64,000 nucleotides of DNA from Macrostomum lignano (GCA_002269645.1 NIVC01000773.1:270838-334837), one strand, 5' to 3'; positions 5,122 to 41,300 are shown, counted from the stretch's first letter. The notes: generated from the sequence alone by a model not told the origin. Translations and numbers: made by a program.

Positions 5122-5183
<62 letters not shown>

Positions 5184-7990: not shown

Positions 7991-9619
7991 GATGGCAGCG
8001 AAGGCCCAGTACATGTAGAGAATCACCAGTGACCTGATTACAGGTATTCAGTCTAGTGCCACAGAAGACTGCAGTTTCCATAAAAACTGTTTGCATGGGT
8101 GCAGTTCGTACTACTTAGTAGATGCAAAAGCAGTAGCACGATCGGGTTTGAATCCGCGCCTATCACAACCGAGTGTATGGAAGTTGCATATCACTCAGTA
8201 GTATAAAGGAGACTTTTTGTTACTAAAAATGACAAATACTTATTGGACTACTGACACACTCAATTTTACACAGCTCAACTTGTTAGTACAGCAAATTTAG
8301 CCCTGCATATCAACTTTGTGTATTTGTGTATATATAGATTTACTATAATTTATATAATAGATGTTAGATCTAGTTCGCTAAGCCTAAGTAGTACAGATCC
8401 ACAACGAACAACAAACAGACCGACACTTATCAAGTAGTATGCGTTGCGTGTGTGACGATGAATAACAAAAAAGGAGCAGGAAAGGTTTTTTAGAATTTCT
8501 TTATTATTTAATTAAAATAGGACACACAGACATTTCAAAAAACTGGTTTGTTTGCTTTTAGCGCGAAAAATCAACTGTTCTAAAAACACTCGCTCGTTTA
8601 GATTAGTTTCAACTTTTATCGCTTTCTAAGATCGATAGAAAAACACGCACACACGGGAGCCTATAGTGAAATCATATGGACAGCATGTACTTTCTAGGGG
8701 GTTAGTATGTACACTAATCTGCCGAGAGAATGGAGCGAGAGAACACGGGCATGAAGGAGCGCAGGCAAAAGAAGTCTCTAAATTGAACCTGAAATTGCAT
8801 ATCTATGTAGAATTAGAATACAAACAATAATTAAACGCTCACACTTAACTACTGACGCTAAGTAGTAAGCACTAATTAGTTGGGCCTATGGCTAGCGCAG
8901 AGGACTAAAAAACACGCAGAAAAAGTGATTTATATAAAGAGAAGTGAGCAACGCATGTTATAGTGAATAGAGTTACACAGATAATATTAGTTATAACTGA
9001 ACTGGTGCTCTCATTATTACCTTGATTATTTGCGCGTCTCCAGAGGACGAGGATTTTGTTTAAACAAAAATAATAACACAAAACACGGCAATTAACCAAT
9101 TAGTAAGAGTAATAAAAATGAATCAATTAAGTAGTCAATATTTTAGTGCGTAGAACAACTTTTAAAAATCTTCTGCCAGCCAGCGAGCAAAGAAGCAAAT
9201 TATTATCATAATACAAGAGGGAGGCCCGAGCTATGTTCTTGTTGCCAGGGGGGGGGGTTATAACTAATATATGCGCCAGGTGCCTTACTGATTACCATAT
9301 TAGCAATAAAACTATATTTATCAATAGTATTCTTATTAATGCCACGCACAGGTACACAGTGTGTAAGAAAGAAAAAATAAAGCAAAAATTTTTATGACGA
9401 TTTCCACCGCAAATATTTACGATTAAAAGCCGGCTTCTAGTTGAAAACGCGGTTGGATTAACACAGACGAGTGGGCCAACTTAATAATTTGCCCAAAAAA
9501 TAAACATAAAGCGGGAACAACATAGATACACTTAGAAACATATAAGCAAACAGGGGGTTAACGGAAACAAGAAAGTAAATCTCAGAGAGCAAACAGATCT
9601 TAAGGGGTTGGGGAAGGGA

Positions 9620-10569: not shown

Positions 10570-13500
10570 TTAAAGTCCACCGCCGCCGCCTGAGGCCTCC
10601 GACTGACCGGCGGTTTCAGACGATTTTGCCGCGGCGGCGCCCTCGCTGCCACCGGTGCTCGAGGCGGCAGCGGCAGCAGCGGCGGCCATGTTCATGGCGT
10701 GCGGCGGAATCAGCGTACTGTTCAGCTCCGGCTTGATGGCCAGCTCTGTGAATGGAGAGGTGCGGATGGAGCGGATTGAAGGGGCGCTGATGGATGAGGT
10801 CGATTGAGGGGCGGATGGGAGCGGCTGATGGGAGTGGCTGATTGAGTAGGGGGCGGGTGGGAGTGGCTGATTGAGTAGGGGGCGGATGGGAGTGGCTGAT
10901 TGAGTAGGGGGCGGATGGGAGTGGCTGATTGAGTAGGGGGCGGATGGGAGTGGCTGATTGAGTAGGGGGCGGATGGGAGTGGCTGATTGAGTAGGGGGCG
11001 GATGGGAGTGGCTGATTAAGATGCTAATGGCAGATAGAAGCGGATTGGAGCGGATGAGAATGGCAGATGGGGCGGATTGGAGCGGAAGAGAATGGCAGAT
11101 GTGGCGGATTGGAGCGGATGAGAATGGCAGATGGGGGGGCGGATTGGAGCGGCCGATGGACGAGTAGACAAACATCGAGCAGGCGAAGGAGCGATCCGCT
11201 TGCCAGATAGATGTCAGCTCAGCAAAACATTTGAGCACACTATAAATATGCACTCAGCTCACCAGCAGGTGTAAAATTGAACAGCGGAGGCAGCGGCTTG
11301 TTGCCAGGCAGCCTGGTGCCCTCGAGGCGCAGCTCGTCGAAGAACGGATGGCAGCAGGCCTCCAGCGGGCTGATGCGCAGCTGCGGAGTGTACTCAAGCA
11401 GCCGGCTGACCAGGTTGATGGCCTCTGGCGGAGTGCGGGGCCGGAAAACCTTGGCCCACGGGTGGCTGCGGGATTGTGGGAGCAGCGATTTAGAGAGTTC
11501 TCACACCGAGTGAAATTTCAATTGTCACGCCGAGTGAAATTTTAATTGTCACACCGAGTGAAGAGTGAAAAGTCTTTCTTAAAAAAGCCAAAAAACACAC
11601 TTGATCCAAAGAGGTCTCTCACCCCTTGATTTGCGGAAACTTGAAATCCGTATAGTTGGGATTCATCTCGCTGATCTGCTCCCTGGTCGGGGTGCCCAGC
11701 ACCTTGATGATCTCCACCAGCTGGTCGACTCCGGTCTCTCCTGGATAGATCGGCTTGCCCAGCAGCAGCTCGGCCAGCACGCAGCCCGCAGACCAGACAT
11801 CTGAGTGGGTTGGGGCGGCAGCGGCAGGCTTAGTTCAGTTCAGTGTGTAACTAACGGTGAGCGCTGAGAACTTGTGAGATTCGATTAGGGTAGTTTGAAA
11901 GGGACAGCCCGAATCTGAGCAACTGGAAGGCTGGTATTGGCGGCACAGCAACGAGGATCTGGAAGGCTGGCCCAGCAACTGAGGATCTGGAAGTGACCCA
12001 GCAACTGAGAGGCTGGCCCAGCAGCTGAGGATCTGGGAGGCTGGCCCAGCAACTGAGGATTTGGGAGGCTGGCCCAGCAACTGAGGATCTGGGAGGCTGG
12101 CCCAGCAACTGAGGATCTGGGAGGCTGGCCCAGCAGCTGAAGATCTGGGAGGCTGGCCCAGCAACTGAGAGGCTGGCCCAGCAACTGAGAGGCTGGCCCA
12201 GCAGCTGAGGATCTGGGAGGCTGGCCCAGCAACTGAGAGGCTGGCCCAGCAGCTGAGGATCTGGGAGGCTGGCCCAGCAACTGAGGATCTGGGAGGCTGG
12301 CCCAGCAACTGAGGATTTGGGAGGCTGGCCCAGAAACTGAGGATCTGGGAGGCTGGCCAAGAAACTGAGGATCTGAATAGGGTGGAAAATAAACTGAGGA
12401 TCTGGGAGGCTGGCCCAGCAACTGAGGATCTGGGAGGCTGGCCAAGAAACTGAGGATCTGGGAGGCTGGCCAAGAAACTGAGGATCTCTCTGAGGCGGCC
12501 CAGCAAACTGAAGACTCACCAATCTGGCAGGTGTAGTTGGTGGCCCCGAAGATGAGCTCGGGGGCCCGGTAGTAGCGGCTGCAGATGTAGGACACATTCG
12601 GCTCGCCCCGCTGCAGGTGCTTGGCGCTGCCGAAGTCGCAGAGCTTGAGCACACCAGACTCAGGGTCCAGCAGCAGATTCTGCGGCTTGATGTCGCGGTG
12701 GCAAATGCCTTTGCTGTGTATATAACTCAGCGAGCGGAACATTTGGTACATGTAGAGCTTGATGAACAGCACAGGTATGGTCTGCATCTGCTTGCTGTAG
12801 TGCCGGCACACCCGGTACACGGTCTCCGGGATGAACTCCAGCACTAGGTTCAGGTACACTTCATCCTTCTGCGATACGGATGTGGAAGGGTGCGAATTTA
12901 TTGCTGCAATACGAAATACAACTCGTAATTTAGAGCTTTAAGCCTTCCGCTAGCTCAGACAAACTGTCCTCTGAAGTTGAGTCGTCACAAACAGACGAAC
13001 TGTTCATTACTGGAGTGAAAAATCGCCCAAGGTAGACATTTAAGCATGCACTTTCATAAGACCTCAACTTTATGAGACGTAAACGTCAAAGACCTAAACT
13101 TCACAAGATCCAAACTTCACAAGAAATAAACCTAAAAGACCTAAACTCCAAAGACCTAGACTTCAAAGACCTAGACTTCACAAGACCTAAATCTGAAAGA
13201 CCTAGACTTCAAAAGACCTAAACTTCACAAAACCTAAACTTCACAAGACCTAAACTTCACAAGACATAAGCTTCACAAGACCTAGACTTCACCAGACCTA
13301 GACTTTACAAGATCTAAACTTCACAAGACCTAGACTTCACAAGACTTAGACTTCACAAGACCTAAACTTCACAAGACATAAACTTCACAAGACCTAAACT
13401 TCACAAGACCTAGACTTCACAAGACCTAGACTTCACAAGACCTAGACTTCACAAGACCTAGACTTCACAAGACTTAGACTTCACAAGACCTAAACTTCAC

Positions 13501-14731
13501 AAGACCTAAACTTCACAAGACCTAGACTTCACAAGACCTAGACTTCACAAGACCTAGACTTCACAAGACCTAAACTGAACTAAACTTTAAGCGACATGAT
13601 GAAATTTAGGTTTTATGAACTCACCTAATAAAGTGGATTTATTCGATGCCAATAAATTAGAAAGCAACAATGGTATTTGAAAAAAATTGATAACCAATTC
13701 GAATCTGACTAATAGATCTGAGAGTAATGCTTAGAAGTGCATCTTTACTCCAAGGGTACTTCAATTTGGGTAACTCGGTAACAAGATTGATAGCTTAATG
13801 TAGTAAGCGAAATGAGACAGCGACCTTTGACACACTTTGCTATACAGTAAATGAATGCTTGCAGGGTCTAAATTAGATGCAACTGTAGATAAGCCTGAGA
13901 CAGAAATTCGGGCAGAATATATTAAAAGGGGGAAGGAAACGAGGGGCCAAGGCCAGTTGAGTTGCTCATACTTGATAAGTTTGAAAATTTTCATTCTAAT
14001 ACTCTAATGGAAAAAACTAGATATAACACGGGGGTTTCCTGTGCGCAAATCTCTTGCGCAGTTAATTTTTAACTTTATTGAAAACAGCGGAAGTCAACTA
14101 CAATTGCAATAGATGGAATGCTAAAAAACTTTAAGATGGCAGGAGAAACAACTTATAGACAACAAAGACTGCTAAATTTAAGACAGACTTTGTTCTTCTA
14201 GAAAACAAAGACTGCTAGACAAAGACACGGATTGCTGTTCTACAGAACAAAGACTGCTAGACAAAGACACGGATTGCTGTTCTACAGAACAAAGACTGCT
14301 AGAGAAAGACAGGGATTGCTGTTCTACAGAACAAAGACTGCTAGATAAAGACAGGGATTGCTGTTCTAGAGAACAAAGACTGCACAGATTCAAAACAGAC
14401 ATCCCGTACTGAAAACAAAGACTACAACCAACTGTCGAACTGAACGCAAAACTCACCTTCTCGCCGCTGGAATAGAAGAAGTACTTCAGCGTGACAATGT
14501 TTTGATGCTCAATCGATCGCATGATCTGCAGTTCGCGATTCTTGAACCGCTTGTCTTGCAACACCTTCTTGATGGCCACCACCTCCTTCGGTTCGACCAG
14601 TTTGGCTTGGTACACGACACCGAAACTGCCGTTACCAATGATTTTCATATCGGTGAACGAGATCTCCTGGGCTCGGTCACCTTGACCAGGCGTGGCGATC
14701 ACCGTGTTCACCTTGGAGTCCTTTGCTGTGC
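10570..14731 (-). CDS. GSK3: Glycogen synthase kinase-3 (shaggy-like); exons 14731-14457, 12868-12520, 11800-11623, 11465-11263, 10745-10570; first exon further upstream
   Basis: [79 protein letters not shown]. All introns are GT-AG with compatible phases (0, 1, 2, 1). Confidence 0.97.
10815..11160. repeat. 29-bp G-rich minisatellite (GGGAGTGGCTGATTGAGTAGGGGGCGGAT) in the last GSK3 intron
   Basis: About 6 near-perfect copies, then a degenerate GGCGGATTGGAGCGG series. Confidence 0.9.
11920..12505 (+). repeat. 28-bp minisatellite family A, array 2 (GSK3 intron)
   Basis: Same unit as 7140-7990; begins about 10 nt from the splice donor at 12519. Confidence 0.95.
13060..13575. repeat. 16-bp minisatellite (CTTCACAAGACCTARA) in a GSK3 intron
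   Basis: Tandem periodicity read directly. Confidence 0.93.
14162..14390. repeat. 42-bp tandem repeat, about 5.5 copies, in a GSK3 intron
   Basis: ACAAAGACT anchors at 14205, 14247, 14289, 14331 and 14373. Confidence 0.92.
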
Positions 14732-19745: not shown

Positions 19746-20482
19746 CGATCAAGTCCCAGCAGTGTCTCTTATCATCGGCTATGACTTCGAGATTGACAGA
19801 AAAAAGACACTAGTTGGCAGGTAAGTGCTAAGCCCCCTCTAGTCGGAAGCCCGATTTCGAAAGTTCCGGTTTGGTGAGCCAGGACACACGGGCTGGTGGC
19901 AGCGGGTTAGTTAATCTGCGGATTAGCTGATCTCTACCTTCGAAATTCTCCCTGCTTGTCTCTCGCTGTCCCTCTCTTAGCTATAGGACCTTAGACTGCT
20001 CGCCACACGATCAAACTACCATGGGGCTGACCATCTGACAGGAGTGGTTGGCCAGGACTCTAATTGATTTATTTCTGAGACCTGAGGCCCGAAGGCTTCC
20101 CCACAAGGGGGCCGAAAGGCCGAAACCCATCAGTGTATTGAAGCATGAGAACTTTCACGACCCGACTCGATGATTAGCTATTTAAGCCCTCAAAACCGAC
20201 TATATTGAACCCCTCACTTCATGTGGTTGGTTTATTGAAGATACGAGTAATATTTGACATTTTTATTGTAACACTGCTCAAAACCTTTGCCTCAATTCAT
20301 CTTACGAGTACGAGTATTAGCAAAGTAAAACAGCTATAGCAAAATCTTATAGAGACCATAGATATGAATGAAAGTTTGAACACTCTTTTCCCACTAGGCA
20401 TGTAAGCGTGTACGGCCGAAAGAATAACAGACTCTAGTTTTTAACAGAAATCTTTGTTACGTTGTCAAGAAACCCGACAAAA

Positions 20483-23400
20483 ATGAGCAAGAAACAAAGC
20501 ATAGAATCGCCCGGCTTGTTGGAGAAAACCGGTTGTCAGGTGCTTGAAGCAGCAGTCAGCAAAGATTCTAAACCAACTGGAGGCAGAGAGCGGGTCATCT
20601 ATTTCTCATTCCTCATCCAGTCGCCTCTCCGCGAGCTATTCACCAATCCCAAGGAGGACAAGCGAATCCTGAAGATCGAAATCACCTGTCACTGCTTGTT
20701 TCGGCTATCTGGCGAGTTCACCAGCGTGCCGCAGTTCCAACTGGTCGAGGCCTATTTAGATGACCGATTTGGCAACTTCGAGGGCTGTGTGCACATGCTC
20801 GAGGCCGTCTTCAAGGGTGTCGGCTGCAGTTTCATTCTTTACCGTACCATCAACATGAGCGTACACCCGAACGGCAGCTGCGACTACAGCTACCACTGCA
20901 ACAACATTGACCGGAACTTCTACCAAGATGCGCGACCCTCTGACCATCGCGATGGTGCGAACGAAGTCGAAGAGGCTTCGTCCAGTTGCCTTCAGAGAGC
21001 CTTGCTGGCAAAGACTGGCGCACCTGAACAGTTCGATTCGAATTTCAGCAGCTTCTCGGTGACAAACTCCACGGTTAGCCGGCTGTTCAAGGAGCTCGAA
21101 AGAGACATTCCCAAAGGGTGGAGCGGCGACGCCTCCGTGGCGCCGTCTCGAAAGAGCCTTGAAGACTTTTTAGGCATGGAACTCGCCGTCCAGCAGCTGG
21201 AAGTCATCACCAGCAGTAATTACGAATTCGTCATCGAGGAGATGTTCTTCGAGGCTCTCATTGGTGAGATGAGGTCTGAGATGTTGCACTGCGTACTTTA
21301 TCAGATACGCGTCGATTTGGTGGAGGCCGTCGTTCTAGAGAGTGTTAACGGCAGCTGCTTGGTGAGTCAATCTGCTTCTCAGCTTGTCACCAGCCTCTTG
21401 GAGCCAGCGGTTCTGGTTGATCAAACCTGTGCCGACTGTCTCGGTGACAACTGCACAGTGGTGTACAGCAGCGCAGCCCTCTCTGCACAGGGCTGCGCCA
21501 ACAACAACAGCACCTGCTGCGACTTCGAATACGACAGTGATGACAACGGTATCGAGCCAGTGCAAGAGGAGGGCGACAGCATCGCGGACGTCTCAGAGTC
21601 GCTGATTGACGAGCGCTGGTCGGAGAGCGGCCGCCAACTCGCGAAGCCGCCGACGGTGCGTCGCTTTGCGCCAGCAGCAGGCAAGCAGCAGAGCACGATG
21701 ACGCCTGCGCTTCGATTGGAGCAGATTTTCTACGATTGGTGCGACTTAACAGTCCAGGAGGCCTGCTTAGAAACGTTTGTTGAGCTGGTCTCCCAGCGCC
21801 TGGTGGTTGCTATGTACAAAACCAGCCGATCCAAGTCGCAATTCGAGTGTCGCGTTGTGAAGACATTCGCCAGATTTGGCAGAGCCTTCAGCACACTGTC
21901 ATCGGCTGCCACTGAGCCCGGGCTTGCCGATGTGATCACCGGCTTCTTTGCTTGCGTAGCTGACACGTTAAATGACCCGGACGCTCGGGATTGCCTCGGA
22001 CAGACGTCCGACCTGGTGATGGCCGTGCGGGCTTCCGCAGCTAAAGAGGAAGATGAGGAAAGCGTCAGCAGAGTCGACGATGGCAGCAGCGGCTGTCGAG
22101 GCGGTTGGCAGTGGCTGCGAATTGCACAGAGGGCTTTCCAGCAAGCAATCAGGTAAATCACAAGTTTTCTGGCAGTCAGTCTTAACCTGGGTAGATTTCC
22201 CAGCCCCAAGTTTATCTAGTTTAAAATTGAATGCTCAGTTATCAAAGTTGTGAAGTACTCTTACATCTTATAACCCTGTAGAGAAAAGTGTATCTATCGA
22301 TTGAGTTTCTTGAGATTGCAAGCGGCACCCTTGGACTGTTGCCGACCGCTGCAAATAGCGTTAAATTCTGAGGACGACCATCGCTTCTGTTTCAGAGACC
22401 AGCTCTCCCGCCTGGGGCCCAAGCTGCAGCGCAAAGGGCGTCACCGACGCTCAAACAACTCAAGCGGCGGTGGCGGCGGCGGCGGCGGCGGGAGTAGCTT
22501 CGGGCGCAGACTGGCCGAACTGTTCGACCACTCAAGCAGCGGCGATGCCTCGTCAACCACGGTTACTACAGGCGACAGTTTTCTGCAGCAGTCGACGCCA
22601 GCCGAACGAGAGGAGCAGGAGGCGCCAACCAAAAGGCCGCAGGGTTTGAGCTGCAATCTTCGACTCTGCGTTGAGGCGCCCGCTGCAAACAGCCAGGAGC
22701 CGGAAGACGCTACGCCATTGTTGAGTTTGACAGACCTTTGTGTGGATTCGAGTTTAGTTGACACAGAAAACTGTCGCGATTTGTTATGCGCTGCTGCAGT
22801 TTCGGCGGTGGTCCCGGATGGCGGTGCAATCACGGGCGCCTGGATGACTGCAGCGATTTCCCAGTGTCAGACATACTCCGAGCGGACAGAGCTTCTATCC
22901 TGTCTGGCAACAGAGCCGCTCAGAGACGGTCACGCCAGCTGGATGTCCGTCGAGCCAATCGTTGCAGACGCCGCCGTTGCAGTGGTCTTCAAAGCCGGGC
23001 CAATCCACTTTGCCTGCGCGTCCTTCACCTCCGCTGCCAGCTGCACTGCCGCGCTTTCTGTTGCACTGCCCGACCTGGCGACGAATCTACTTGCAGAGTT
23101 CCGCCCAGCGCCACTGGTTGCCAGGGCTGTGAGTCCGAGGGCCTGTGTTCATCGAGCTCGATCGACGTGGCTGGCGGCGTCTCACTGCTGTCTCCAACTG
23201 CTCGACGCCAAATCACAGCTACCAGTACTGTCGCAATCTTTGCCTACCCAGTTTGTGATTTCAAAGTGTGAAAACTCGACAGGGCTGGCAGCCTGCAACA
23301 TTCACGGCGGAGTCCGACCTTCCAGCAGTCACTGCTACCCGCTCGGTCTGCCTGACGCGGCTGAAACCTCGTCGAAACCGTCGGATGCCAGCTGCGGCTG

Positions 23401-24223
23401 GGGAACGGCTCGCGTTGAACTTGAGCACGCATCGATCGTTCGCCAGTCTGTTCTGGAAGTGCCAGCGATCGCTGAGCAGGCTCTGCGGCACCGGATCGGT
23501 ACAGAGTCAACCCGTGCTGCTGGAAACCAGCTTCGAGCTGTGGTCCGCGGCGAGCCGGCGTGGAAACAATTCCGGAAAGCCAGGTGCACGCAACGGTGGC
23601 CAAATTCCTTTGAACGCGCAACTATCAGCGCCGACGATTGTCCGGCTCCTGGAGGTGGCGGCGACTGGCCGGAGAGGACGGTGCGCGAGTGGAGCTGGGC
23701 ACGGCCGGCCACGGCCCGCCTGAACAGGCCGACTCGGGCCTCGGCGACGGAGTTGCCCGTCGGCGTGCAGAGCGTTTCAACTTCGTCCAGTCCGCCAATA
23801 AGTCTCGTTGAAAGCCTGGCCGACCCCACCATGGTTCCGAGGGACCACTCGGCGATTGAGTCCTGCATCGTGGCGGGTTCGGACTGCTCAGTGTCCGACT
23901 GCAACATTGCCTTCTGCTTGGCAGCCGACTGGTCATTAGAAAAGCGCCAGCTCGAGCTCGTCTCCAGCAAATCGTCGTCGATCTCGCAGCCGCAGACGGT
24001 GCAATTCTGCTGCCGGTTCTCCACAGAGGATTCCGTAGATATGGACTGCTTAATCGCTACTCCAGTGGGAGATGCGCTGAGCTGTGCAGCCAGTGCGCAG
24101 GTGACCATTTTCCAACGGAGCATGAATCTGCCCGAAGAGCAGCTGCTCTCCGCCGGCAGCGGCTCGCTGCTTCGTCTGGCAGTTCGTCGGAGTCAGAGCT
24201 ACAACTGCATCTCGACCTATTGA
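20483..24223 (+). CDS. Uncharacterised 1203-aa protein; coding exons 20483-22152 and 22282-24223; probable 5'UTR exon ending at 19820
   Basis: Two long ORFs joined in frame by a phase-2 intron 22153-22281 (AG|GTAAAT ... CCCTGTAG|A). Upstream intron has CAG|GTAAGT at 19821 and TTTTAACAG ending 20447. No family recognised. Confidence 0.7.
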
Positions 24224-24876: not shown

Positions 24877-25609
24877 TTCTGTGGATCAATACATAGCTTA
24901 TATTTAGCACTTGGAATGGATTTGCGAGTATATCCCACTGGTTCGCTGCGCGTCGCCTTTAAGGTTGGCGATGCACGAGTCCTCGATGCGTGTCGTTGGT
25001 CCGTCCAAGCGACCTGTTGCGGCTGGCAACCTTTAGGAACTTAAGCCACTAATCTCTGGGAGCTAGACCCAGCGAATAGGGTAGCTATAGGTCGTCCGTC
25101 AAATGGTGTTTTACCAGTGCCTTGCGGCATGAAGCTACCTGCATTTGGTAGCAAACTTATGACACAACCCACGTCAGTATTACGAACATGTACATGTAAT
25201 TCTCTATGCCATCTGAAACAATTTTCTGTGAGACCCGATGTACGCAAAATAGTAAGCAAATTAACGGACAAAAATGACCCCTAAAGGAAGTTCTTTAGTC
25301 TGTTTTCATCATTGGTGCTATCAAGGACCACTAGGAACACTTCGTTATAGAATATAAGGACGTAACACTCTCGATTCGTGTAAAAATAGTTGAAGGCCAA
25401 TTTCCGTTCTCGTATACATTAGTGAGATAGAGGAATTGCATGATTTTCAACATAATGTGCCGTTTGCAGAAGCCTATAGGGCTATTAATTTCCGAAATTT
25501 TGCAGTATGTAACCAGAAACACTTAGCTAAATTGTATTATTTTGTGGTTTAGTCATATTATTATAGGTTATTTACCGTTTTTTTACATTACTTATGACTA
25601 GGCTAGGCC

Positions 25610-26674
25610 CATGGATGAATGAATAGAATGGATTGCTATTCTGGCTCTGGCTATTTTCGTTTTTGACTCTTTTGCATCCGGTTCCCCCCCCCGTGCCTTT
25701 TCATTGGTTGATGATTGCCATAGACAGTTTTCGGCCTTCGCCCCTTTCTTTCGATGCACAAGCGCAAAGTTATCGCGGCAATCAGATGTGCTGTTAGTAC
25801 TGAAGTGTTTGCTGATCTCCGCTGTGAGGCAGCAGTGGACGAGAATCATCGCTACGTACTGATGAAAGCAGTCGCTGAGAAATATATGCGAGTCAAGCTG
25901 CTACACATTGTCAGGCGTCAGAATCTGTGCAGCCCGTCGATAAGGTCGCAACTGGGAAAGAAAATTCTCTTTCTCGGCCAGTAACAGCTAAAGATTGTCC
26001 TGTGCTCCTAACATTGGGCTGTAGTGTTCCGACTCTAATTTCATATGATTTAATCATTCTAACAGTCTGTACTCATCGTTACTGGTATCGTATATGTGTG
26101 TTGTTTTCCTGTTCCAATTTCACTCAATTTCACCATTCTAACAGTCTGTGTTGTCATGTACGTTAATAGAATCGTGTACCACAAGTTTTGATGCGTGATG
26201 CACACACAAAGGTACTCCCTCGATGATGATGATGGGCGAAATAGAAGTTACTTGTGTTGAAATAGAACTTTAAAACCAATTTCATAACTCCAATAGTAAA
26301 ATTCAGATAAAGCATCGCCAGTAATCCATTATTGTAGCATTGTCATCGCACCCTCATCATCACCCTCGACATGAAAATCTGAAATCATTACTGTTGTAAT
26401 TTGCAGGGGATTTGTTATCATTCCTCTGCTTCAATTAACAACTTCAATTGACAAACAAGTAACCAGAGAATATCGAGCGCTCGATATTCTCTGCAAGTAA
26501 CTGACATTCTCAGTTCTTTGCGCTTGTGCATCGAAAGAAAGGGGCGAAGGCCGAAAATTGTCTATGGCAATCATCAACCAATGAAAAGGCACGGGGGGGA
26601 ACCGGATGCAAAAAGAGTCAAAAACGAAAATAGCCAGAGCCAGAATAGCAATCCATTCTATTCATTCATCCATG
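25610..26674 (+). mobile_element. Non-autonomous P-superfamily (THAP9-like) DNA transposon, 1065 bp, about 160-bp TIRs, 8-bp TSD
   Basis: Termini CATGGATG...CATCCATG; TIRs 25610-25769 and 26516-26674; TSD GCTAGGCC at 25602-25609 and 26675-26682. Internal fragment ...KAVAEKYMRVKLLHIVRRQN..SIRSQLGKKILFLGQ* (to 25984) resembles P/THAP9 transposase C-termini. Confidence 0.85.
26464..26493. mobile_element. 30-bp perfect palindrome with 8-bp direct repeats (transposon excision scar or micro-element)
   Basis: CAGAGAATATCGAGC-GCTCGATATTCTCTG flanked by CAAGTAAC at 26456-26463 and 26494-26501. Confidence 0.85.
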
Positions 26675-26908
26675 GCTAGGCCTATGACTAAGGATAAATG
26701 TTTATCAACCTGGAACCTAGTAATAAATACTTTATAGACCTATAGACCTATGCTATGCGACTTGATGTGATCGAAACCGGCCAGTTTATTAAGAAATTTT
26801 GTAACTTTTTAAACGATCAATATGTTTCCTACGCAAAGTCAGGCATTTGTAGAGTTTCTTATCCTAGCTGGCATTGTGAAACTGAACTAGTATTTAGCAA
26901 TAATACGT

Positions 26909-28214
26909 TTAGATTTGATATTTGTGCTTCTGCGTGCAGCCATAGAACTCGCACACAGAGGCCGCCTGATAGGGAATGAGCTGTGGTCTCAGGCCAGCTC
27001 TGGCCCGGTTGATCTCGATGCTGAGCTGCGGGACGGTCGGCTTCCTGGCCTGGCAGCCAAACACGAGCACATTGTTGACGTGGACAGATATACAGTTGTA
27101 GGTCGTTGGGTCTTCTCTGGCTAGGACAAAAATATTCGAGCCGAACTCTTTCTCCAAGCCTTGACGCAGTTCGTGAAAAACCTGCATTTGGGAGCATGGG
27201 AAATAATATTGATTATTACATGAGCTAACTGCAGGATTGTGTCCAACCCTGGCTGCTGAAGAAATTTTGCTCGTTCCACTGACTCCTGAGCAGGGACGTG
27301 GCCATGGTTTTTTGGGGGGGGAAGCCTAGACTTCTACACACGTACATGTACACGACTAAGTTTACGTACATGTTTATACGTATACATTATTTTTAGAATT
27401 GGTGCTGTCAGTGCTCATTTTAGCGCCGCAGCTGCATTCATTTTAGCGCCGCAGCTGCATTCATTTTAGCGCCGCAGCTGCATTCATTTTAGCGCCGCAG
27501 CTGCATTCATTTTAGCGCCGCAGCTGCATTCATTTTAGCGCCGCAGCTGCATTCATTTTAGCGCCGCAGCTGCATTCATTTTAGCGCCGCAGCTGCATTC
27601 ATTTTAGCGCCACAGCTGCATTCATTTTAGCGCCGCAGCTGCATTCATTTTAGCGCCACAGGCACTCATTTTAGCGCCGTAGCTGCATTCATTTTAGCGC
27701 CACAGGCTCTCATTTTAGCCCCACAGGCACTCATTTTAGCGCCGCTGGCACTCATTTTAGCGCCGCAGGCACTCACTTTAGCGCCACAGGCACTCACTTT
27801 AGCGCCACAGGCACTCACTTTAGCGCCACAGGCATTCATTTTAGCGCCGCAGCTGCATTCATTTTAGCGCCGCAGGCACTCATTTTAGCGCCACAGGCAC
27901 TCACTTTAGCGCCACAGGCACTCATTTTAGCGCCGCAGCCACTCATTTTAGCGGCACTAAAATGAGTGAACATGAGTATTCAAGTAGTATATCTAGTAAT
28001 CTCCCGCAAGCCTGCATGTAAACTTAGTGCAGAGAGTAGAGTCAGAGGTACATGTGTACTGCTTTACCTGCTCCCCATGCGTGCCGTTGGAGCACAGGCT
28101 GCCATAAGTAATGATGACTTCAACCTCAGCGGCTGCCCTGGCCGACTCAATATTATCCAGCTCCTGGTCGTTGAGCTCCTGAACGTCGCTCTGCTCGCTA
28201 TTTCTGTCGGCCAT
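26909..28214 (-). CDS. Small protein resembling C10orf53/UPF0728, about 139 aa; exons 28214-28068 and 27181-26909
   Basis: Phase-0 GT-AG join (CAG|GTAAAG ... AAATGCAG|GTT). EVIITYGS...YNCISVHVNNVLVFGC recalls VVILRYGP...WNVVELMVNEEVIFHC of C10orf53. An upstream in-frame ATG at 28283 is also possible. Confidence 0.55.
27413..27955. repeat. 23-bp minisatellite (TCATTTTAGCGCCGCAGCTGCAT), intronic
   Basis: About 23 copies, with the variant type drifting along the array. Confidence 0.95.
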
Positions 28215-29392: not shown

Positions 29393-30849
29393 TTACTCAA
29401 ATTTGCAACCATTGAATGAACAGTTGTGGAAACTGTACCTGACCGACGGATTGTCATGACTGATGCCGGTGATCTGCACGGAAGACGACACAGGTACTGG
29501 CACCGGTGAACTCTCACGCAATAGAGTCGCAACAGCTTGTGAAGAACCATTCAAATCAAGTGCCATAGAAACAGCCTCACTGGTAGACTGCAGCGAGCGA
29601 TCACGGCGCTTGGACAGGTAACGGCGAGTTGTCCTCTCAGAAACCTGACCGGTTATCGACATGATGTCAGCCAGGTTGTACCCAGCAGCCTCTAGATCAG
29701 CAATCCTGCTCACTCTACAACAGAAATAAAGTATTGCATAGAAAATATGCAACTGGTTTAAAGCAATATGAAGAAAAAGGCTTACCGAATGCAATGATTC
29801 GTGTACATCTTGGACAAACCGGCCTTCTCGCTCAAGTTTCGCATGAAACGCAGGAAGTAGTTCTCCCCGCGATTCTGCTTTGTTGAGAACATAGGCTGTC
29901 CATTGGAATCCGTGTTGGATAGTGGACGCGGGAACAGATGGTTGTCCTTGGTTGTTGGAGGTAGCAGTTGTAGATATCTCCTCACTTTGGCCGTGTCGTA
30001 GATCCGAGCTTGTTTGTTGTCCGGCCTGGCCTTCGCCTTCACAGGATCGGCTGACTTATTCTTCGTTGGCAGAGCAGGAAGACAGTAGTACTCCTTGCCG
30101 TCAGAATCCGTGTGCAATTCAAGCGAGTCCCTTTGTCTCAGGAACTTCAGATGCTCCTGGCCACGCTCTCCAAAGGAGTAAAGAACATAGAACAGAAATT
30201 TAGCCTGCTCGATTTCAGCCGTAGTCCCTTCAAAGTAGCACCGCAACTTCTGCATGTCGCCTTCTTCAATTGGTTCATACTGCCTGGTGCAGCCACCATC
30301 TCGATGGAAATCACGAACCTTGACACGCAGCATCTCGTTGCAGGATTTGAATTCCTCACCACCGATTATATCGACAGGCAGCTTCAGAACCATGCGTAGG
30401 AAACGCTGAATTCCAGCCCGGATACAGATGAGAGAGGCCGGCGAGTAGAACGAGCCATCCTGTTTCTTCAGCTTGAAGTAGAAGTACCGAAGATATTGGT
30501 TCAATGTAGGATTGTTGACATGCTGAATGTTGCGCAGATTCTCCCCTTCCAGGAAGTCTCGAAAACGTTGGCCATGCTGGTACATCTGCTTCCGAGTATC
30601 CTCAGGCAGACTCTCGATCTCGATTCTGTCCATCTCGGAAACGTCTATCTTTTCATCTCCATCGATCATTGGCAGCCCAGTATCAGCTGGACCATTTTGG
30701 ACATACTTCAGGAACGCATCGAAATCTTCGTCGTGCCGATCAACGGCAGAGGATTCCGAGAGGAAGTTCAGTTCATCCTGCGTGATGTTGCCGAGGTCCT
30801 CACACGGGAGGTTACCCCAATTAATATAATGTATTATCGGGTCGCTCAT
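29393..30849 (-). CDS. Crypton-type (DUF3504-like) tyrosine recombinase, 461 aa; exons 30849-29786 and 29714-29393
   Basis: YLRYFYFKLKKQDGSFYSPASLICIRAGIQRFL, FGERGQE (R), TKNK (K), TNHCIR (HxxR), ITGQVS..RRY (Y); 71-bp phase-2 intron GTAAGC...TTGTAG. Confidence 0.9.
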
Positions 30850-31090: not shown

Positions 31091-31192
31091 GTTAACTGGA
31101 AGAGAGAACTCCAGGCAACGGCCAAATTTCCACTCGCGGCTAGCGCCGCTCGTGGCTTTGGCCGTTGCCTGGAGTTCTCTCTTCCAGTTAAC
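31091..31192. other. 102-bp hairpin with a perfect 36-bp stem upstream of the recombinase
   Basis: 31091-31126 is the exact reverse complement of 31157-31192; the 30-nt loop is itself partly self-complementary. Confidence 0.9.
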
Positions 31193-35327: not shown

Positions 35328-38300
35328 TCAAGCATTATTGACCAGATAGGCTCCGCTGTTGGGCCGGCTTCCCGTGCTCACCGTGGCCGTTTCCTCCAGC
35401 TCCTGGATCGGGTCCAGAAACGAGCAGGCCGTGGCCTGATAGAAGCCGGCGTGCTCAGCAACGGGGAACAGGGGATCAGCGGCGGGGCTCACGCCCTCGG
35501 CCAGCTGCGGATCGATGCCGGCGTAGACGGGCCGGTAGAGCGACCGGGTAGGGGAGATCGAACCCTGGTCGGCCGCCGCCGAGGCCGACAACTGCCGGAA
35601 ATGGGAGGGGGGTTGGGTGGCTTGAGATCGTGAAACTGCAGCAGGGAGAGCGGCAGTTTTCTTTGCTTTTGCTTGAATATAAAAATATTTCTTGCTTTAG
35701 GGTTTAAAAAATGTAAGTGTTAAAAATCGTGAATAAATCGTTCTTTTGTTTTTCTGCCCTCGATTTTCACTTATCCGCGCAGAAATCCCCTCCAAACTTC
35801 ATCTCAATCCTCCCCTGTCTCTCTTGATCCTCCCCTCCTCTTTACCCTCTTCGCTCCCTCTTTACCCTCCTCGGTCCCTCTCTACCCTCCTCTCTCCTCT
35901 TTACCCTCCTCGCTCCCTCTTTACCCTCCTCTCTCCCTCTTTACCCTCCTCTCTCCCTCTTTTCCCTCCTCTCTCCTCTTTACCCTCCTCTCTCCTTCTT
36001 TACCCTCCTCTCTCCCTATTTACCCTCCTCTCTCCTCTTTACCCTCCTCTCTCCTCTTTACCCTCCTCTCTCCCTTTTTAACCTCCTCTATCCCTCTTTA
36101 CCCTCCTCTCTCCCTCTTTACCCTCCTCTCTCCCTCTTTACCCTCCTCTCTCCCTCTTTACCCTCCTCTCTCCCTCTTTACCCATACTTCCTGATAATGC
36201 TCCATTTAGGTGTCAAAAAACCACTGACAAGAACACGTAAATTTAAAGTTTTTATCCTGCAGTTATTTATAGTTTTTCAAACGTTTACATACAATGATTT
36301 ACAAATATTAAACAATCGAACGAAAACAGAATTTTTACTCCTTTTTTTATCAGCATTAAGCGTCACCGAACTACTAATAGTAAAAGATCCGCGCATAAAT
36401 TGCTATTTAGACTTACCCCGTAAGAGACAGTGCGTATTCGCATTATTGAGTTCACTTAAGCAGATATGAGCTTACGAGTATCAGTGCTAAGCTGATGTAA
36501 TAATATAACAATTATAATAGCAACCATATTTACACGAGCGAGGTTCTCAACTAAATTTTATCAAAAAATTTCTTACTATCAAAAGATTATGGACATAAAA
36601 CTCAAAACTTATCTAGAATTATCTTCAGAAATAAACTTTCGATACGTATATCTACCTAGCTACTCTCTCCCATCTACCTCTTTACTCTTCTATCTACCTA
36701 TCTGCTCTCTCTCCCATCTACCTCTTTACTCTCTCGTTATCTGCTTGTCTCCTCTCTCCCATCTATCGGTTTACTCTCTCTTATCTACCAGTATATTTTC
36801 ACCTATCTAATAAGCTACTCCCTCCCATCTACCAGTCTACTCTCTCCCATCAACCTTTTTACTCTCTCTTATCTACTTATCTCCTTTCCCTATCTACCAT
36901 TCTACTCTCCAATCTACCAGTCTACTCTTCTAATCTACCAGTCTACTCTTCCCATCTACCAGTCTACTCTTCTCATATACCAGTCTACTCTCTCTCATCT
37001 ACCAGTCTACTCTCTCCATCTACCAGTCTACTCTCTCCATCTACCAGTCTACTCTCTCCATCTACCAGTCTACTCTCTCCATCTACCAGTCTACTCTCTC
37101 CATCTACCAGTCTACTCTCTCCATCTACCAGTCTACTCTCTCCATCTACCAGTCTACTCTCTCCATCTACCAGTCTACTCTCTCCATCTACCTGCCTACT
37201 CTCTCCATCTACCTGCCTACTCTCTCCATCTACCAGTCTACTCTCTCCATCTACCAGTCTACTCTCTCCATCTACCTGCCTACTCTCTCCATCTACCTGC
37301 CTACTCTCTCCATCTACCTGCCTACTCTCTCCATCTACCAGTCTACTCTCTCCATCTACCAGTCTACTCTCTCCATCTACCTGCCTACTCTCTCCATCTA
37401 CCAGTCTACTCTCTCCATCTACCAGTCTACTCTCTCCATCTACCAGTCTACTCTCTCCATCTACCAGTCTACTCTCTCCATCTACCAGTCTACTCTTCTC
37501 ATATACCAGTCTACTCTCTCCCATCTACCAGTCTACTCTTCTCATATACCAGTCTACTCTCTCTTATCTACCAGTCTACTCTCTAATTTTCTACCTGCCT
37601 ACTCTCCCCATCTGTTTGTTGACTTTCTCCTATTTATCTGTCTACTCTCTGATCTACCTCCGGGTCCCTCAGTCTCCCTACTCTTCAGCAGATAAATTTT
37701 GGTCTCAAAGCGGATGCCAGCCAGGAAATTCCCAAAAGCCCGCACAAAAGCTATTTTTTAGGTTTAAAGCGCGGAGGGGCGCACAAAGTCGCAGACAGTT
37801 TGTCCGGGACCGCCAAAGTGTTCGGAGCGATGCAGGGCGCCCTTCCAGACCACTTTGAACTCGGCGGACTGCGCCAGCCAGCTGGCAGAGGCCAACAGGT
37901 CATCGCCGCCGTTGTGGCGACTCTCTGAATTGCCCGATGAGGCTTCCAGGCTGGCGTAGACGGTGGGGGACCTGACAGATGCCGTCTAAGGAGGCGCATT
38001 TCGAATATGGGATTAGTGGGGCTCTTTAATAGCAGCGAAGCGGCTGGAGACTGAACAGAGGTTAAGGGAAGGAAGGAAAGGTAAGGAACCACTGCTTGAT
38101 TAATAATTGTGCCCAGCAATTGAGGATCTGGGAGGCTGGCCCAGCAACTGAGGATCTGGGAGGCTGGCCCAGCAACTAAGGATCTGGGAGGCTGGCCCAG
38201 CAACTGGGGATCTGGGAGGCTGGTGGCCCAGCAACTGAGGATCTGGGAGGCTGGCCTATCAGCTGATGATCTGGGAGGCTGGCCCAGCAACTGAGGATCT

Positions 38301-41300
38301 GGGAGGCTGGCCCAGCAGCTGAGGATCTGGGAGGCTGGCCCAGCAACTGAGGATCTGGGAGGCTGGCCCAGCAACTGAGGATCTGGGAGGCTGGTGGCCC
38401 AGCAACTGAGGATCTGGGAGGCTGGCCTAGCAACTGAGGATCTGGGAGACTGGCCCAGCAACTGAGGATCTGGGAGGCTGGCCCAGCAACTGAGGATCTG
38501 GGAGGCTGGCCCAGCAACTGAGGATCTGGGAGGCTGGCCCAGCAGCTGAGGATCTGGGAGGCTGGCCCAGCAACTGAGGATCTGGGAGGCTGGCCTAGCA
38601 ACTGAGGATCTGGGAGGCTGGCCCAGCAACTGAGGATCTGGGAGGCTGGCATAGCAACTGAGGATCTGAGAGGCTGGCCCAGCAACTGAGGATCTGGGAG
38701 GCTGGTGGCCCAGCAACTGAGGATCTGGGAGGCTGGCCTAGAAACTGAGGATCTGGGAGACTGGTCCAGCAACTGGGGATCTGGGAGGCTGGTGGCCCAG
38801 CAACTGAGGATCTGGGAGGCTGGCCCAGCAACTGAGGATCTGGGAGGCTGGCCCAGCAACTAAGGATCTGGGAGGGTGGCAGATCCAGATCCTGCGGCCT
38901 GTTCGATGCACTTCTAACCAAACTGACGACAACAAAGAAAATTTCGAATTCTAAAACACTTTTCGTTAGAGCTAAAAGCGGAAAAAACAGATTGAAGTGC
39001 AGAGCGGCTATTCCTGGAACTGGGGGCGTGGCACGTCAAGGTCGCTCACGCGATGCTCAAAGCAGCTCGAGCTGACATCTGATTCGCCCGACGTTTGAGC
39101 AGGAAGCGGAATCAAAACAGATCTTTTTCAGAGTGTTACCGCGGACACGAAATTCGGATCATGTTTTGGGATTTATTCAAACGAAGAACGCATGTCTGAT
39201 TTAACAAACTTTTTAACCATGAAACCAAAAACCTTTTACTTGTTACACTTGGGGTTGGGTGTCTGTCGAGCCCCCAACAATTTCACACCTCGATGCGCAT
39301 AGATTATTTGAGTCGCACAACTCACGCGAAACCCAGATTAAAGGACTCAAACGGGTGCAGCAGACTCACCCGTTCGCACTGTCCCAGCAGCCGCTGCCGC
39401 TCCATCTCGTGTATCTTCTTGTACTCGATAGCGTCCTGGTAGAACAGGATGAGCACGGCTAGGGAAGGCAGCAGGTGAGCGGTGACGACCACAATGGAGT
39501 GCACAGGCAGGTAAACCCGGAGGTCGTGATTGAACACCCCGGAGCAGGAGGCGGCGCTGGAGCTGCGCAGGAATAGCCAGTAGGCCAGGTTGATGAGGCT
39601 CCCGAAGGCGAACACAAGGACGCTACTGCAATTCGGAGGTTGATGCACGCGAGTCAAGACATCTGCTGGGTCTACAGACTCCCAGGATCCCAGATCCCAG
39701 ATCCCAGGATCTCAGATCCCAGATCCCAGGATCTCAGATCCCAGGATCCCAGGATCCCAGATCCCAGATCCCAGGATCCCAGATCCCAGGATCCCAGATC
39801 CCAGGATCCCAGATCCCAGATCCCAGGATCCCAGATCCCAGGATCCCAGATCCCAGGATCCCAGATCCCAGGATCCAGATCCCAGGATCCCAGATCCCAG
39901 GATCCCAGATCCCAGGATCCCAGATCCCAGGATCCCAGATCCCAGGATCCCAGATCCCAGGATCCCAGATCCCAGGATCCCAGATCCCAGGATCCCAGAT
40001 CCCAGGATCCCAGATCCCAGGATCCCAGATCACAGATCCCAGGATCTCAGATCCCAGGATCCTAGATCCCAGATCCCAGGATCCCAGAATCTTGTGTTCA
40101 ATCCCAGATCCCAGAATGTGCCCGATAGGGAGAGTCAGCCAGTGGCTGACTTAAACAAATTTGTACTTTTTTGAAGTGAAATAATTAAATAACCAAGCTT
40201 TATCTATTTTAACTTTTCCTTTTATTAGTCACGTCCCGCTGTCCAGGCGTTTATTGACAGCAAATTAGCGAAATTTGTTTATAAAAAATCGGCCAAGGCT
40301 TCCCAACGAAGGCTAACAAAGAATTGTTTGTTTTTATCCACTTCTCGAATTGAACTGATTCTGTCGAATGCATTACACACGAATTTGTGTTTCTCAAGCT
40401 GGTCCAGCTTTGACCAGCTGGGCACACTGATCTGATGCAGCTAATGGAGAGGCTGTAAGCAGCGACATAGCTAAACTCGCCCCAGGGGACCTCAGCTGCG
40501 TTGAACAGCTGCGCCAGTCGCCTGTCTCCGAGAGCCGGACCCGAGGGAGTCGATTGTGGTGCATTGGGTCGGAATAGAAGATTTGCACCAGCAAAGTGCT
40601 TCTCGGCCCGGCAGCGATTCTGTGCCTTCGATTTCAAGCTGGGGATGCTGGCTACTATCCGCCGCTGCTCTAGTGCAGTTCAAGCACTTTGGCAAACACA
40701 AGCCTGGATGCCACCGTCTCTACCTCTTTGCTGTCCAGGGATTAAGCCTGGACCCGCGATTCTGCAGGGATCCGTGCAGTATATTTAGCAATGCGATCCC
40801 AAAGTGCACATCACAGAGCTGGCCATCGCGGCTAAGTTGGATCTAAATCTTGGGTAGTAATCCGGATGCAGATTGTAGAACTTAGGATTGGGTTTCTGGA
40901 TTTTGGATTGGGATTCTGGGATTTTAGATTCAGATTCTGGATTTAGGATTGGGATTCTGGGATTTCGGATTGGGATCCTGGGGTTTCGGATTGGGATTCT
41001 GGGATTTTAGGATTGGGATTCTGGGATTTAGGATTGGGATTCTGGGATTTCGGATTGGATCCTGGGATTTTGGATTGGGATTCTGGGATTTTAAATTGGG
41101 ATTCTGGGATTTTGGATTGGGATGCTGGGATTTTGGATTGGGATTCTGGGATTTTAAATTGGGATTCTGGGATTTTGGATTGGGATGCTGGGATTTTGGA
41201 TTAAGATTTTAGGATTTGGATTGGGATTCTGAGATCGGAGCTCTGAAGGCTGGGATGGAGACTCTGGATTCTAGACTGGGATTCAGGAATTTTCGGGGCT

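What the first reader, a model, noticed from the sequence alone, without database searches (positions are those of the whole stretch)
26456..26501. 30-bp perfect palindrome with 8-bp TSD: geometry of a P-transposase excision scar (17+17-4)
Seen: CAAGTAAC-[CAGAGAATATCGAGCGCTCGATATTCTCTG]-CAAGTAAC, a loopless palindrome between 8-bp direct repeats. Established: Drosophila P transposase makes 8-bp TSDs and a 17-nt staggered cut that leaves 17-nt TIR-derived 3' overhangs on the donor DNA. hAT excision instead leaves flank-derived footprints. Inference: two overhangs CAGAGAATATCGAGCGC annealing through their self-complementary GCGC ends and filled in give exactly this 30-mer. It would be the scar of a second P-like family that landed inside the P element at 25610-26674 and left. 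If the 30-mer is very abundant, it may instead be a transposase-mobilised micro-element made only of two half-TIRs.
Basis: partly seen in the sequence, partly recalled or inferred. Interest (0 to 1): 0.82.

Follow-up and report, generated by a model that had tools for sequence, protein, structure and literature searches.

The report
Leftover ends of a lost transposon
A 30-base perfect palindrome between two copies of an 8-base repeat is what remains of a jumping gene that landed inside another (P-type) jumping gene and was later lost; its shape matches the scars that P elements leave in fruit flies, but the parent element could not be found, so which transposon family made it stays open.

Summary
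CAAGTAAC | 30-bp perfect palindrome | CAAGTAAC lies at 26456-26501, inside a 1065-bp non-autonomous element (25610-26674). I confirmed that this host belongs to the P superfamily: it carries a THAP9-type transposase tail, a CATGGATGAA terminus and an 8-bp TSD.

The feature is almost certainly (about 0.9) the two outermost 15 nt of a cut-and-paste transposon's inverted repeats, joined head to head between an intact 8-bp target-site duplication.

It proposes a P-type long staggered cut followed by joining of the two tails. In Drosophila the commonest short-microhomology junction after P excision is exactly TSD + 30-bp perfect palindrome + TSD.

The "17+17-4" arithmetic is not diagnostic, however. 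Tails of 15, 16, 17, 18 nt and longer all give the same 30-mer, and any join of two identical TIR strands at a self-complementary motif gives a perfect palindrome.

The terminus CAGAGAA matches hAT (Hermes), not any P terminus examined; those begin CAT or CAA. No parent, second copy or empty site was found, because the source genome is absent from every searchable collection.

Verdict: a real but ordinary transposon remnant, of unresolved family and modest interest.

The parts
26456..26463 (.). Left copy of the 8-bp target-site duplication, CAAGTAAC
   Evidence: identical to 26494-26501; the repeat is exactly 8 bp.
26464..26478 (+). Left arm of the palindrome, CAGAGAATATCGAGC. It is the outermost 15 nt of one terminal inverted repeat of the lost element.
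   Evidence: (I6: 15-nt arms, 100% complementary, 0 nt apart). The first 7 nt equal the Hermes (hAT) TIR start.
26479..26493 (-). Right arm of the palindrome, the same 15 nt on the other strand (the other TIR end).
26494..26501 (.). Right copy of the 8-bp target-site duplication, CAAGTAAC
25610..26674 (+). Host: a 1065-bp internally deleted, non-autonomous P-superfamily element with terminus CATGGATGAATG.
   Evidence: Searches give the structure. Searches show the ORF tail is homologous to THAP9/P transposase C-termini. Searches show the terminus is conserved in relatives.
25610..25769 (+). Host left terminal inverted repeat (about 160 bp)
   Evidence: 97.5% identical to 26516-26674 in inverted orientation.
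26516..26674 (-). Host right terminal inverted repeat. The 30-mer insertion site lies 15 bp inside its inner edge.
25760..25984 (+). Remnant of the host's transposase gene: the last 74 codons plus the stop (...KKILFLGQ*).
   Evidence: One search gives the translation; 11 representatives match, best E 4e-13, all at their C-termini; those proteins carry TNP-like_GBD, TNP-like_RNaseH_C and THAP9_C domains.
25602..25609 (.). Host TSD, left copy, GCTAGGCC
26675..26682 (.). Host TSD, right copy, GCTAGGCC

Best explanation
A cut-and-paste DNA transposon with termini 5'-CAGAGAATATCGAGC... inserted into the unique 3' region of a non-autonomous P-superfamily element and duplicated the 8-bp target CAAGTAAC. 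It was later lost. Only the outermost 15 nt of each inverted repeat remain, joined head to head between both TSD copies; I hold this part at about 0.9.

The most likely route of loss is transposase excision by a P-type long staggered cut. The 3' strand is cut at the element end and the 5' strand about 16-17 nt inside it. Each donor flank then keeps a 3' single-stranded tail made of TIR sequence. The two tails have the same sequence, so they can pair only at a self-complementary motif. Here that motif is CG at positions 15-16 or GCGC at positions 14-17. Fill-in and ligation then give the 30-bp perfect palindrome.

Shown: the structure, the TSD and the P identity of the host. Established elsewhere: the P cleavage chemistry and the junction spectrum in Drosophila. 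Inferred: that the lost element used that chemistry. Under this reading the 30-mer is a dead scar. A 17-nt stagger from both ends of a 30-bp duplex would leave two non-overlapping 13-nt strands, so it could not move again.
For: The structure and its statistics are. No arm sequence occurs elsewhere in the window, so the palindrome was not copied from local DNA.

The Drosophila P{wa} junctions in PMC2895639 Table 1 have the form TSD + up to 17 nt of TIR tail + microhomology + up to 17 nt + TSD. The commonest short-microhomology class (14 isolates) is a 30-bp perfect palindrome and the next (5 isolates) a 32-bp one; I checked both. Together they are 19 of 68 end-joining junctions.

The 17-nt 3' extension is a P-specific feature (PMC7776569). 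hAT, Transib and MULE transposases instead hairpin the flanking DNA and leave no TIR nucleotides behind (PMC5499845).

This genome holds P-superfamily elements: the host. A second 8-bp-TSD element with a CATAC terminus lies at 63389-63684. No hAT or other transposase domain was detected in the ORFs scanned.
Against: The terminus CAGAGAA is the Hermes (hAT) start. Every P-type terminus I could read begins CAT or CAA: Drosophila CATGATGAAA, Pdre2 CATACCTG, host CATGGATGAA, and relatives CATAGATGAAGG, CATGGATGAAGG (twice) and CAAGGATGATAG.

The AT-rich TSD CAAGTAAC is unlike the host's GC-rich GCTAGGCC.

The arithmetic does not single out 17 nt.

No parent element, second scar or empty site was found. 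Whether non-drosophilid P transposases make the long stagger at all is not established; the zebrafish work does not report it.
Confidence: 0.45

Rival explanations
1. In-situ miniaturisation of a hAT-like (or other 8-bp-TSD) element. The parent inserted here and most of it was later deleted by repair rather than by a special transposase cut. A self-complementary motif in a TIR (GCGC, AGCGCT, CGAGCGCTCG and so on) reads the same in both TIRs, so it also forms a pair of direct repeats. [quoted passage not shown]
For: The terminus CAGAGAA equals Hermes CAGAGAACAACAACAAG over 7 nt, and hAT elements make 8-bp TSDs. Any join of two identical TIR strands at a self-complementary motif gives a perfect palindrome, and tails of 15-23 nt all reproduce the 30-mer. 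Abortive gap repair plus microhomology joining is a documented way of shrinking DNA transposons (PMC3814204). 'SDSA + end joining of nascent DNA' is the usual outcome in flies (PMC2895639). The 30-mer folds into a stable hairpin (-12.1 kcal/mol, z = -6.2).
Against: It requires both repair tracts to stop within about 15-20 nt of the ends, or a deletion that happens to use the outermost possible motif. Known deletion derivatives and MITEs are tens to hundreds of bp. hAT excision itself leaves no TIR bases. No hAT transposase domain was found in the ORFs scanned.
Confidence: 0.3
2. A TIR-only micro-element. The 30-mer is itself a mobile unit made of two half-TIRs. It was mobilised in trans by the parent's transposase and inserted here as such, creating the TSD.
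For: It has perfect TIRs and a perfect 8-bp TSD. One copy in 64 kb does not exclude thousands of copies in a large genome.
Against: There is only one copy in the window. The 30-mer is absent from 596 Gb of prokaryotic genomes, and no extension of the 17-mer into the palindrome appears in the 120 metagenome hits listed or in the viral hits. If the transposase cuts P-style, a 30-bp duplex cannot be excised as a duplex (inference). From my own knowledge, hAT and P elements need subterminal binding sites beyond 15 nt. Thirty bp is far below any MITE described in the papers read.
Confidence: 0.1
3. Not transposon-derived. It would be a palindromic filler insertion made during break repair (snap-back or templated synthesis), with the 8-bp repeat arising from microhomology-primed duplication, or an assembly artefact.
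For: Polymerase-theta repair can create templated and palindromic insertions (PMC2895639, insertion classes).
Against: Neither arm is copied from nearby sequence. The arms start with CA-, like DDE transposon ends. An exact 8-bp direct repeat abuts both ends of a perfect 30-bp palindrome, an arrangement that occurred only 3 times in the window and never in simulations. No known assembly artefact gives this small a structure (own knowledge).
Confidence: 0.05

Closest known systems
Excision (donor-site) junctions of the Drosophila melanogaster P element, e.g. P{wa} repair products
   Same: Both 8-bp TSD copies are kept. Between them lie only the outer nucleotides (up to 17) of each TIR in inverted orientation, joined at a short self-complementary microhomology. 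The commonest Drosophila short-microhomology product is likewise a 30-bp perfect palindrome (PMC2895639 Table 1).
   Different: The terminal sequence is CAGAGAATATCG, not CATGATGAAA. The TSD is AT-rich. The organism is an unidentified non-drosophilid metazoan (best GSK3 identity 83%). The parent element and its transposase are unknown, so the cut position is inferred rather than shown.
hAT superfamily elements (Hermes, hobo, Tol2 type)
   Same: An 8-bp TSD, and a terminus CAGAGAA identical to the first 7 nt of the Hermes 17-bp TIR.
   Different: hAT transposases hairpin the flanking DNA, so their excision footprints come from the flank and contain no TIR bases. A hAT origin therefore needs a separate deletion mechanism. 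The target consensus nTnnnnAn (from my own knowledge) is only half matched by CAAGTAAC.
Microhomology-mediated miniaturisation of DNA transposons (abortive gap repair + MMEJ; Ozma to Gnome/Elf/Goblin MITEs)
   Same: An internal deletion between microhomologous sites that leaves both TIRs and the TSD (PMC3814204).
   Different: Those products are MITE-sized and amplified. This one is 30 bp with no internal sequence at all, and only a single copy is known.
Host element's own clade: THAP9-like P elements with terminus CATGGATGAAGG found in metagenome and Logan contigs (L122, L125, L126, L133)
   Same: The host shares the transposase tail ...KKI(L/I)FLGQ and the terminal CATGGATGA motif.
   Different: The 30-mer's termini show no similarity to this clade, so if its parent was P-like it belonged to a different lineage.

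Membership tests
P-type excision scar | Both copies of an 8-bp TSD are retained around the remnant | tested here: met
   CAAGTAAC at 26456-63 and 26494-501, exactly 8 bp.
P-type excision scar | The remnant consists only of TIR-terminal sequence, at most 17 nt per side, in inverted orientation, joined at a microhomology or with small insertions | tested here: met
   15 unambiguous nt per side. The 30-mer is compatible with 15-17-nt tails and is of the same class as the 30- and 32-bp Drosophila junctions. It is also compatible with longer tails, so this feature is met but not exclusive.
P-type excision scar | A parent element with the same termini that encodes a THAP9/P transposase | not testable with these tools
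   No other copy in the window. The source genome is absent from the protein and contig collections.
P-type excision scar | Termini resembling known P-superfamily ends | tested here: not met
   The seven P termini read begin CAT or CAA; the 30-mer begins CAGAG. This is a soft criterion, because P TIRs are diverse (BuT5 has 3-bp TIRs).
P-type excision scar | The transposase cuts the 5' strand about 17 nt inside the element | not testable with these tools
   This needs biochemistry or a genome-wide junction spectrum.
hAT element derivative | An 8-bp TSD | tested here: met
hAT element derivative | A terminus of the CAGAG/CAGGG type | tested here: met
   CAGAGAA equals the first 7 nt of the Hermes TIR.
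hAT element derivative | A parent encoding a hAT transposase; target consensus nTnnnnAn | tested here: inconclusive
   No hAT domain was detected in the ORFs scanned. The TSD matches one of the two consensus positions in either orientation. The parent was not found.
hAT excision footprint | A footprint made of flank-derived (hairpin-opening) nucleotides with no TIR sequence | tested here: not met
   The remnant is unrelated to the flanks and begins with transposon-like CA termini.
MITE / micro-element | Multiple dispersed copies, each with its own TSD | tested here: inconclusive
   One copy in 64 kb. None in prokaryotic genomes, viral contigs or the 120 metagenome contigs listed. The host genome itself could not be searched.
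P superfamily (host element 25610-26674) | Transposase homologous to THAP9/P transposase; 8-bp TSD; TIRs | tested here: met
   The 74-aa tail hits proteins with TNP-like_GBD, TNP-like_RNaseH_C and THAP9_C domains. TSD GCTAGGCC and 160-bp TIRs. The terminal 35 bp is 91% identical to the end of the L122 element.

The most novel reading that the evidence does not exclude
The 30-mer would be a genuine long-stagger excision scar left by a family whose ends look hAT-like (CAGAGAA). That would mean the 15-17-nt staggered donor cut, so far shown only for the Drosophila P transposase, is used outside drosophilids by a divergent P/THAP9 lineage, or even by a transposase with hAT-type ends. Such palindromic TSD-flanked scars could then serve as a purely genomic read-out of cleavage chemistry across animals.
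Probability: 0.12. Interest if true: 0.6.

Novelty: new member of a known kind. Interest (0 to 1): 0.33.

Why it matters
If the P-type reading holds, this would be a natural, sequence-only witness that a non-drosophilid transposase leaves long TIR-derived tails on donor DNA. That property has been demonstrated biochemically only for Drosophila P. It would also suggest a simple genome-wide assay: collect TSD-flanked TIR-TIR palindromes and read the maximum retained length to infer the cut position for uncharacterised THAP9-like families.

If the rival holds, it is the extreme end-point of microhomology-mediated transposon shrinkage. It would illustrate that self-complementary motifs in TIRs act as built-in direct repeats.

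Either way it is a single neutral remnant inside a dead transposon, with no evident effect on the host genome.

Tried and rejected
1. Parent or other copies in the window. The 17-mer at up to 3 mismatches, the 15-mer at up to 3, and relaxed TIR+TSD scans to 20 kb found none.

2. Public DNA. All listed hits are single bacterial-looking matches that do not continue into the palindrome and have no inverted partner. The 30-mer is absent from genome contigs. The 17-mer and 15-mer in viral contigs gave 1 and 47 chance hits, with no TIR pair carrying a TSD. The host TIR 22-mer is absent from viral contigs.

3. Reaching the source genome through proteins. The 355-aa ORF is not on record. The host ORF tail and the 640-aa ORF next to the host have no word-index hits. 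The GSK3 exons hit nothing closer than 83%. So neither orthologous loci nor other host copies could be fetched, and the empty-site test was impossible.

4. Pfam on the host ORF tail found nothing even at E = 10. The exhaustive representative search rescued the host's family assignment.

5. Pfam on 70 further ORF segments of the window, looking for hAT or P transposase remnants, found nothing. Rfam found nothing.

6. Literature string searches for the TIR sequences found no paper. The Anopheles P/MITE paper prints no TIR sequences in its text. PMC428445 is not held.

7. Rejected: chance (statistics); local snap-back copy (arms not found nearby); part of the host's own TIR structure (it lies 15 bp inside the TIR edge and has no counterpart at the left end).

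Full report
**1. What is in the sequence**

Window 26456-26501 reads CAAGTAAC-CAGAGAATATCGAGCGCTCGATATTCTCTG-CAAGTAAC.
- The middle 30 bp equal their own reverse complement, with 15-nt arms and no loop (I6).
- The flanking direct repeat is exactly 8 bp.
- This is the longest palindrome in the 64-kb window. In 100 first-order Markov simulations no loopless palindrome had arms longer than 11 nt.
- A blind scan of the whole window for at least 9 bp of perfect terminal inverted repeat bounded by a perfect 8-bp direct repeat returns only two structures, this one and the element that contains it.
- A relaxed scan gives three hits in the window and none in each of ten simulations.
- As single-stranded DNA the 46-mer folds into a 13-bp stem hairpin of -12.1 kcal/mol (z = -6.2).

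**2. The surroundings**

The feature sits in a 1065-bp element, 25610-26674.
- It has about 160-bp terminal inverted repeats (97.5% identical), the terminus CATGGATGAATG and an 8-bp TSD, GCTAGGCC.
- Directly inside the left TIR is the last 74 codons of a gene ending ...KKILFLGQ* (25760-25984).
- Pfam and the word-indexed protein search saw nothing for this fragment.
- The exhaustive HMMER search found 11 representatives (best E 4e-13), all matching at their C-termini. These proteins carry TNP-like GTP-binding, TNP-like RNase H C-terminal and THAP9 C-terminal domains and end in the same ...KKI(L/I)FLGQ.
- Contigs encoding them show elements ending ...CTTCATCTATG...CTTCATCCATG (twice) and ...TATCATCCTTG. 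The host's terminal 35 bp is 91% identical to that of L122.

The host is thus an internally deleted P-superfamily element. It belongs to a clade whose terminus CATGGATGAAGG is conserved across several unidentified eukaryotes and resembles Drosophila P (CATGATGAAA). The 30-mer lies in the host's unique 3' part, 15 bp inside the inner edge of the right TIR.

The window itself is metazoan. It holds GSK3 exons, an ENaC-like gene, a rhodopsin-type GPCR and many minisatellites. No close relative is in the databases; the best GSK3 identity is 83%.

**3. What it is**

Several facts point one way:
- a sequence foreign to its surroundings (no other copy of either arm in the window);
- a start of CA... 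on both strands;
- content consisting only of two inverted copies of one 15-mer;
- an exact 8-bp duplication of the target on each side.

This is the signature of a cut-and-paste transposon of which only the two extreme ends remain. I hold this generic statement at about 0.9. The pre-insertion site reconstructs as ...CAATTGACAAACAAGTAACTGACATTCTCAG...

**4. How it most likely arose**

The established facts are as follows.
- P transposase cuts the 3' strand at the element end and the 5' strand 17 nt inside. This leaves 17-nt 3' tails of TIR sequence on the donor flanks (PMC7776569; PMC2895639).
- Sequenced donor junctions after P{wa} excision have the form TSD + up to 17 nt + microhomology or insert + up to 17 nt + TSD.
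- In that table the most frequent short-microhomology product (14 isolates) is acccagac-CATGATGAAATAAC(AT)GTTATTTCATCATG-acccagac.
- I verified that this is a 30-bp perfect palindrome between the TSD copies, and that the next class (5 isolates) is a 32-bp perfect palindrome. Together they make 19 of 68 end-joining products.

The finding is therefore the same object, in another sequence, as the commonest experimentally observed P scar. By contrast, hAT, Transib and Mutator transposases hairpin the flanking DNA and leave no TIR bases (PMC5499845). No other known superfamily leaves 15 or more TIR nucleotides. This makes the P-type cut the most economical single mechanism.

**5. Why that is not proof**

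(a) The arithmetic is not unique. Tails of 15 nt (blunt join), 16 nt (CG overlap), 17 nt (GCGC), 18 nt (AGCGCT) and so on up to 23 nt all reproduce the same 30-mer. Only 15 nt of the parent TIR are actually known. The '17-mer' CAGAGAATATCGAGCGC assumes that positions 16-17 are GC.

(b) Symmetry comes for free. The two TIR-bearing 3' strands have the same sequence, so they can anneal only at a self-complementary motif, and any such join yields a perfect palindrome. Equivalently, a self-complementary motif in a TIR is present in both TIRs as a direct repeat. Abortive gap repair followed by microhomology-mediated joining, repair of an internal break, or replication slippage could then collapse any TIR element to such a palindrome. 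The first of these is documented for P, Ac, Tc1 and Mutator derivatives and for mosquito MITEs (PMC3814204; 'SDSA+EJ').

(c) The terminus argues for hAT. CAGAGAA is identical to the first 7 nt of the Hermes TIR, CAGAGAACAACAACAAG. All seven P-type termini I could read begin CAT or CAA. The AT-rich TSD also differs from the host's GC-rich one.

(d) Nothing could be learned from other copies, because there are none in reach (section 6).

Against the hAT and deletion rival, it needs both retained stretches to be at the extreme minimum, whereas known deletion derivatives are much longer. In addition, no hAT domain was detected in the ORFs I scanned, while at least one and possibly two P-like elements are present.

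Weighing these, I put the P-type scar at about 0.45, in-situ microhomology deletion of a hAT-like or other element at about 0.30, a mobile TIR-only micro-element at about 0.10 and a non-transposon origin at about 0.05. The remaining 0.10 is unassigned.

If the transposase cuts P-style, a 30-bp element cannot be re-excised as a duplex, because cuts 17 nt in from each end pass each other and leave two non-overlapping 13-mers. 'P-like' and 'mobile 30-mer' are therefore mutually exclusive.

**6. Searches for relatives**

All listed hits are single occurrences in high-GC, bacterial-looking contigs that diverge right after the 17-mer and have no inverted partner.
- The exact 30-mer is absent from 596 Gb of prokaryotic genomes.
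- Viral contigs gave 1 hit for the 17-mer and 47 hits for the 15-mer, with no TIR pair carrying a TSD.
- Protein-based routes to the source genome failed. Neither other host copies nor the orthologous locus could be fetched.
- No paper contains the TIR strings.

**7. Comparison with what is known, and novelty**

In function it works like, or more exactly is a fossil of, a P-element donor-site junction. Membership of that class is met for the TSD and the geometry, is not met for terminal sequence similarity, and is untestable for the parent and the cut position.

It is not a hAT excision footprint; that defining feature was tested and not met. It could still be a hAT deletion derivative.

As a kind of object it is known, and I file it as a new member of a known kind. 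The most novel reading not excluded is that a lineage with hAT-like ends, or a divergent non-drosophilid P lineage, uses the long staggered cut. I give that about 0.12.

**8. Verdict**

This is a real, well-defined, statistically secure transposon remnant nested in a P-superfamily element. It is over-specified (17+17-4), contradicted by the terminal sequence, and unverified for lack of the genome.

Interest is modest at 0.33. It would be a nice teaching example and a possible genomic read-out of cleavage chemistry, but it is a single neutral scar whose family is unresolved.

Noticed in passing
window 25610-26674; loci L122, L125, L126, L133: The host P-like element belongs to a clade found in several unrelated metagenome and Logan contigs. 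Its extreme terminus (CATGGATGAAGG-type, close to Drosophila P CATGATGAAA) is conserved although the transposase tails are only 44-51% identical. A CCAATCAG motif recurs in the subterminal region of L125, L126, L129 and L133.
   Followed up: partly
window 63389-63684: A 296-bp non-coding element with a perfect 8-bp TSD, CTTAAAAG, and 12/14 matching termini CATACATG(T/C)GCAA. The terminus resembles zebrafish Pdre2 (CATACCTGTCAAC), while the TSD fits the hAT nTnnnnAn pattern. It is a probable MITE of the P or hAT superfamily.
   Followed up: partly
window 31091-31192: A 102-bp perfect hairpin with 36-nt arms (100% complementary) and a 30-nt loop; imperfect inverted symmetry continues into the flanks (TGCAATG / CATTGCA). 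It lies about 240 bp upstream of the 355-aa ORF on the minus strand. Its nature is unknown.
   Followed up: no
window 29782-30849 (-): An intact 355-aa ORF with only a weak QRICH1-domain match (E 0.002, below Pfam's cut-off). It is not on record in the protein collection. It may be a domesticated or transposon-derived gene.
   Followed up: partly
window 7085-8096, 11835-12654, 37751-38859: One minisatellite family, which translates as ...[28 protein letters not shown]... in one frame, occurs at three separate places. One copy lies directly after a GSK3 kinase exon, so the open frame runs from the exon into the repeat.
   Followed up: no
window 27415-27953: A 23-bp minisatellite with 24.5 copies and 92% matches, about 740 bp downstream of the host element. 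It grades into a 21-bp variant up to about 27800+.
   Followed up: no
window 20462-24223 (+): Two long ORFs (564 and 640 aa) in a GC-rich block have no detectable homologue among 5.8 billion proteins. The only signal is a sub-threshold DUF4813 match. This is either a lineage-specific gene or a non-coding open frame.
   Followed up: partly
window 2239-5188 (-), 11885-14711 (-), 56522-57478 (+): The host genes in the window are an ENaC/degenerin-like channel with a 22-residue poly-Q N-terminus, GSK3 exons (at most 83% identical to any database protein) and a rhodopsin-family GPCR. They show the window is from a metazoan with no close sequenced relative in the collections.
   Followed up: partly
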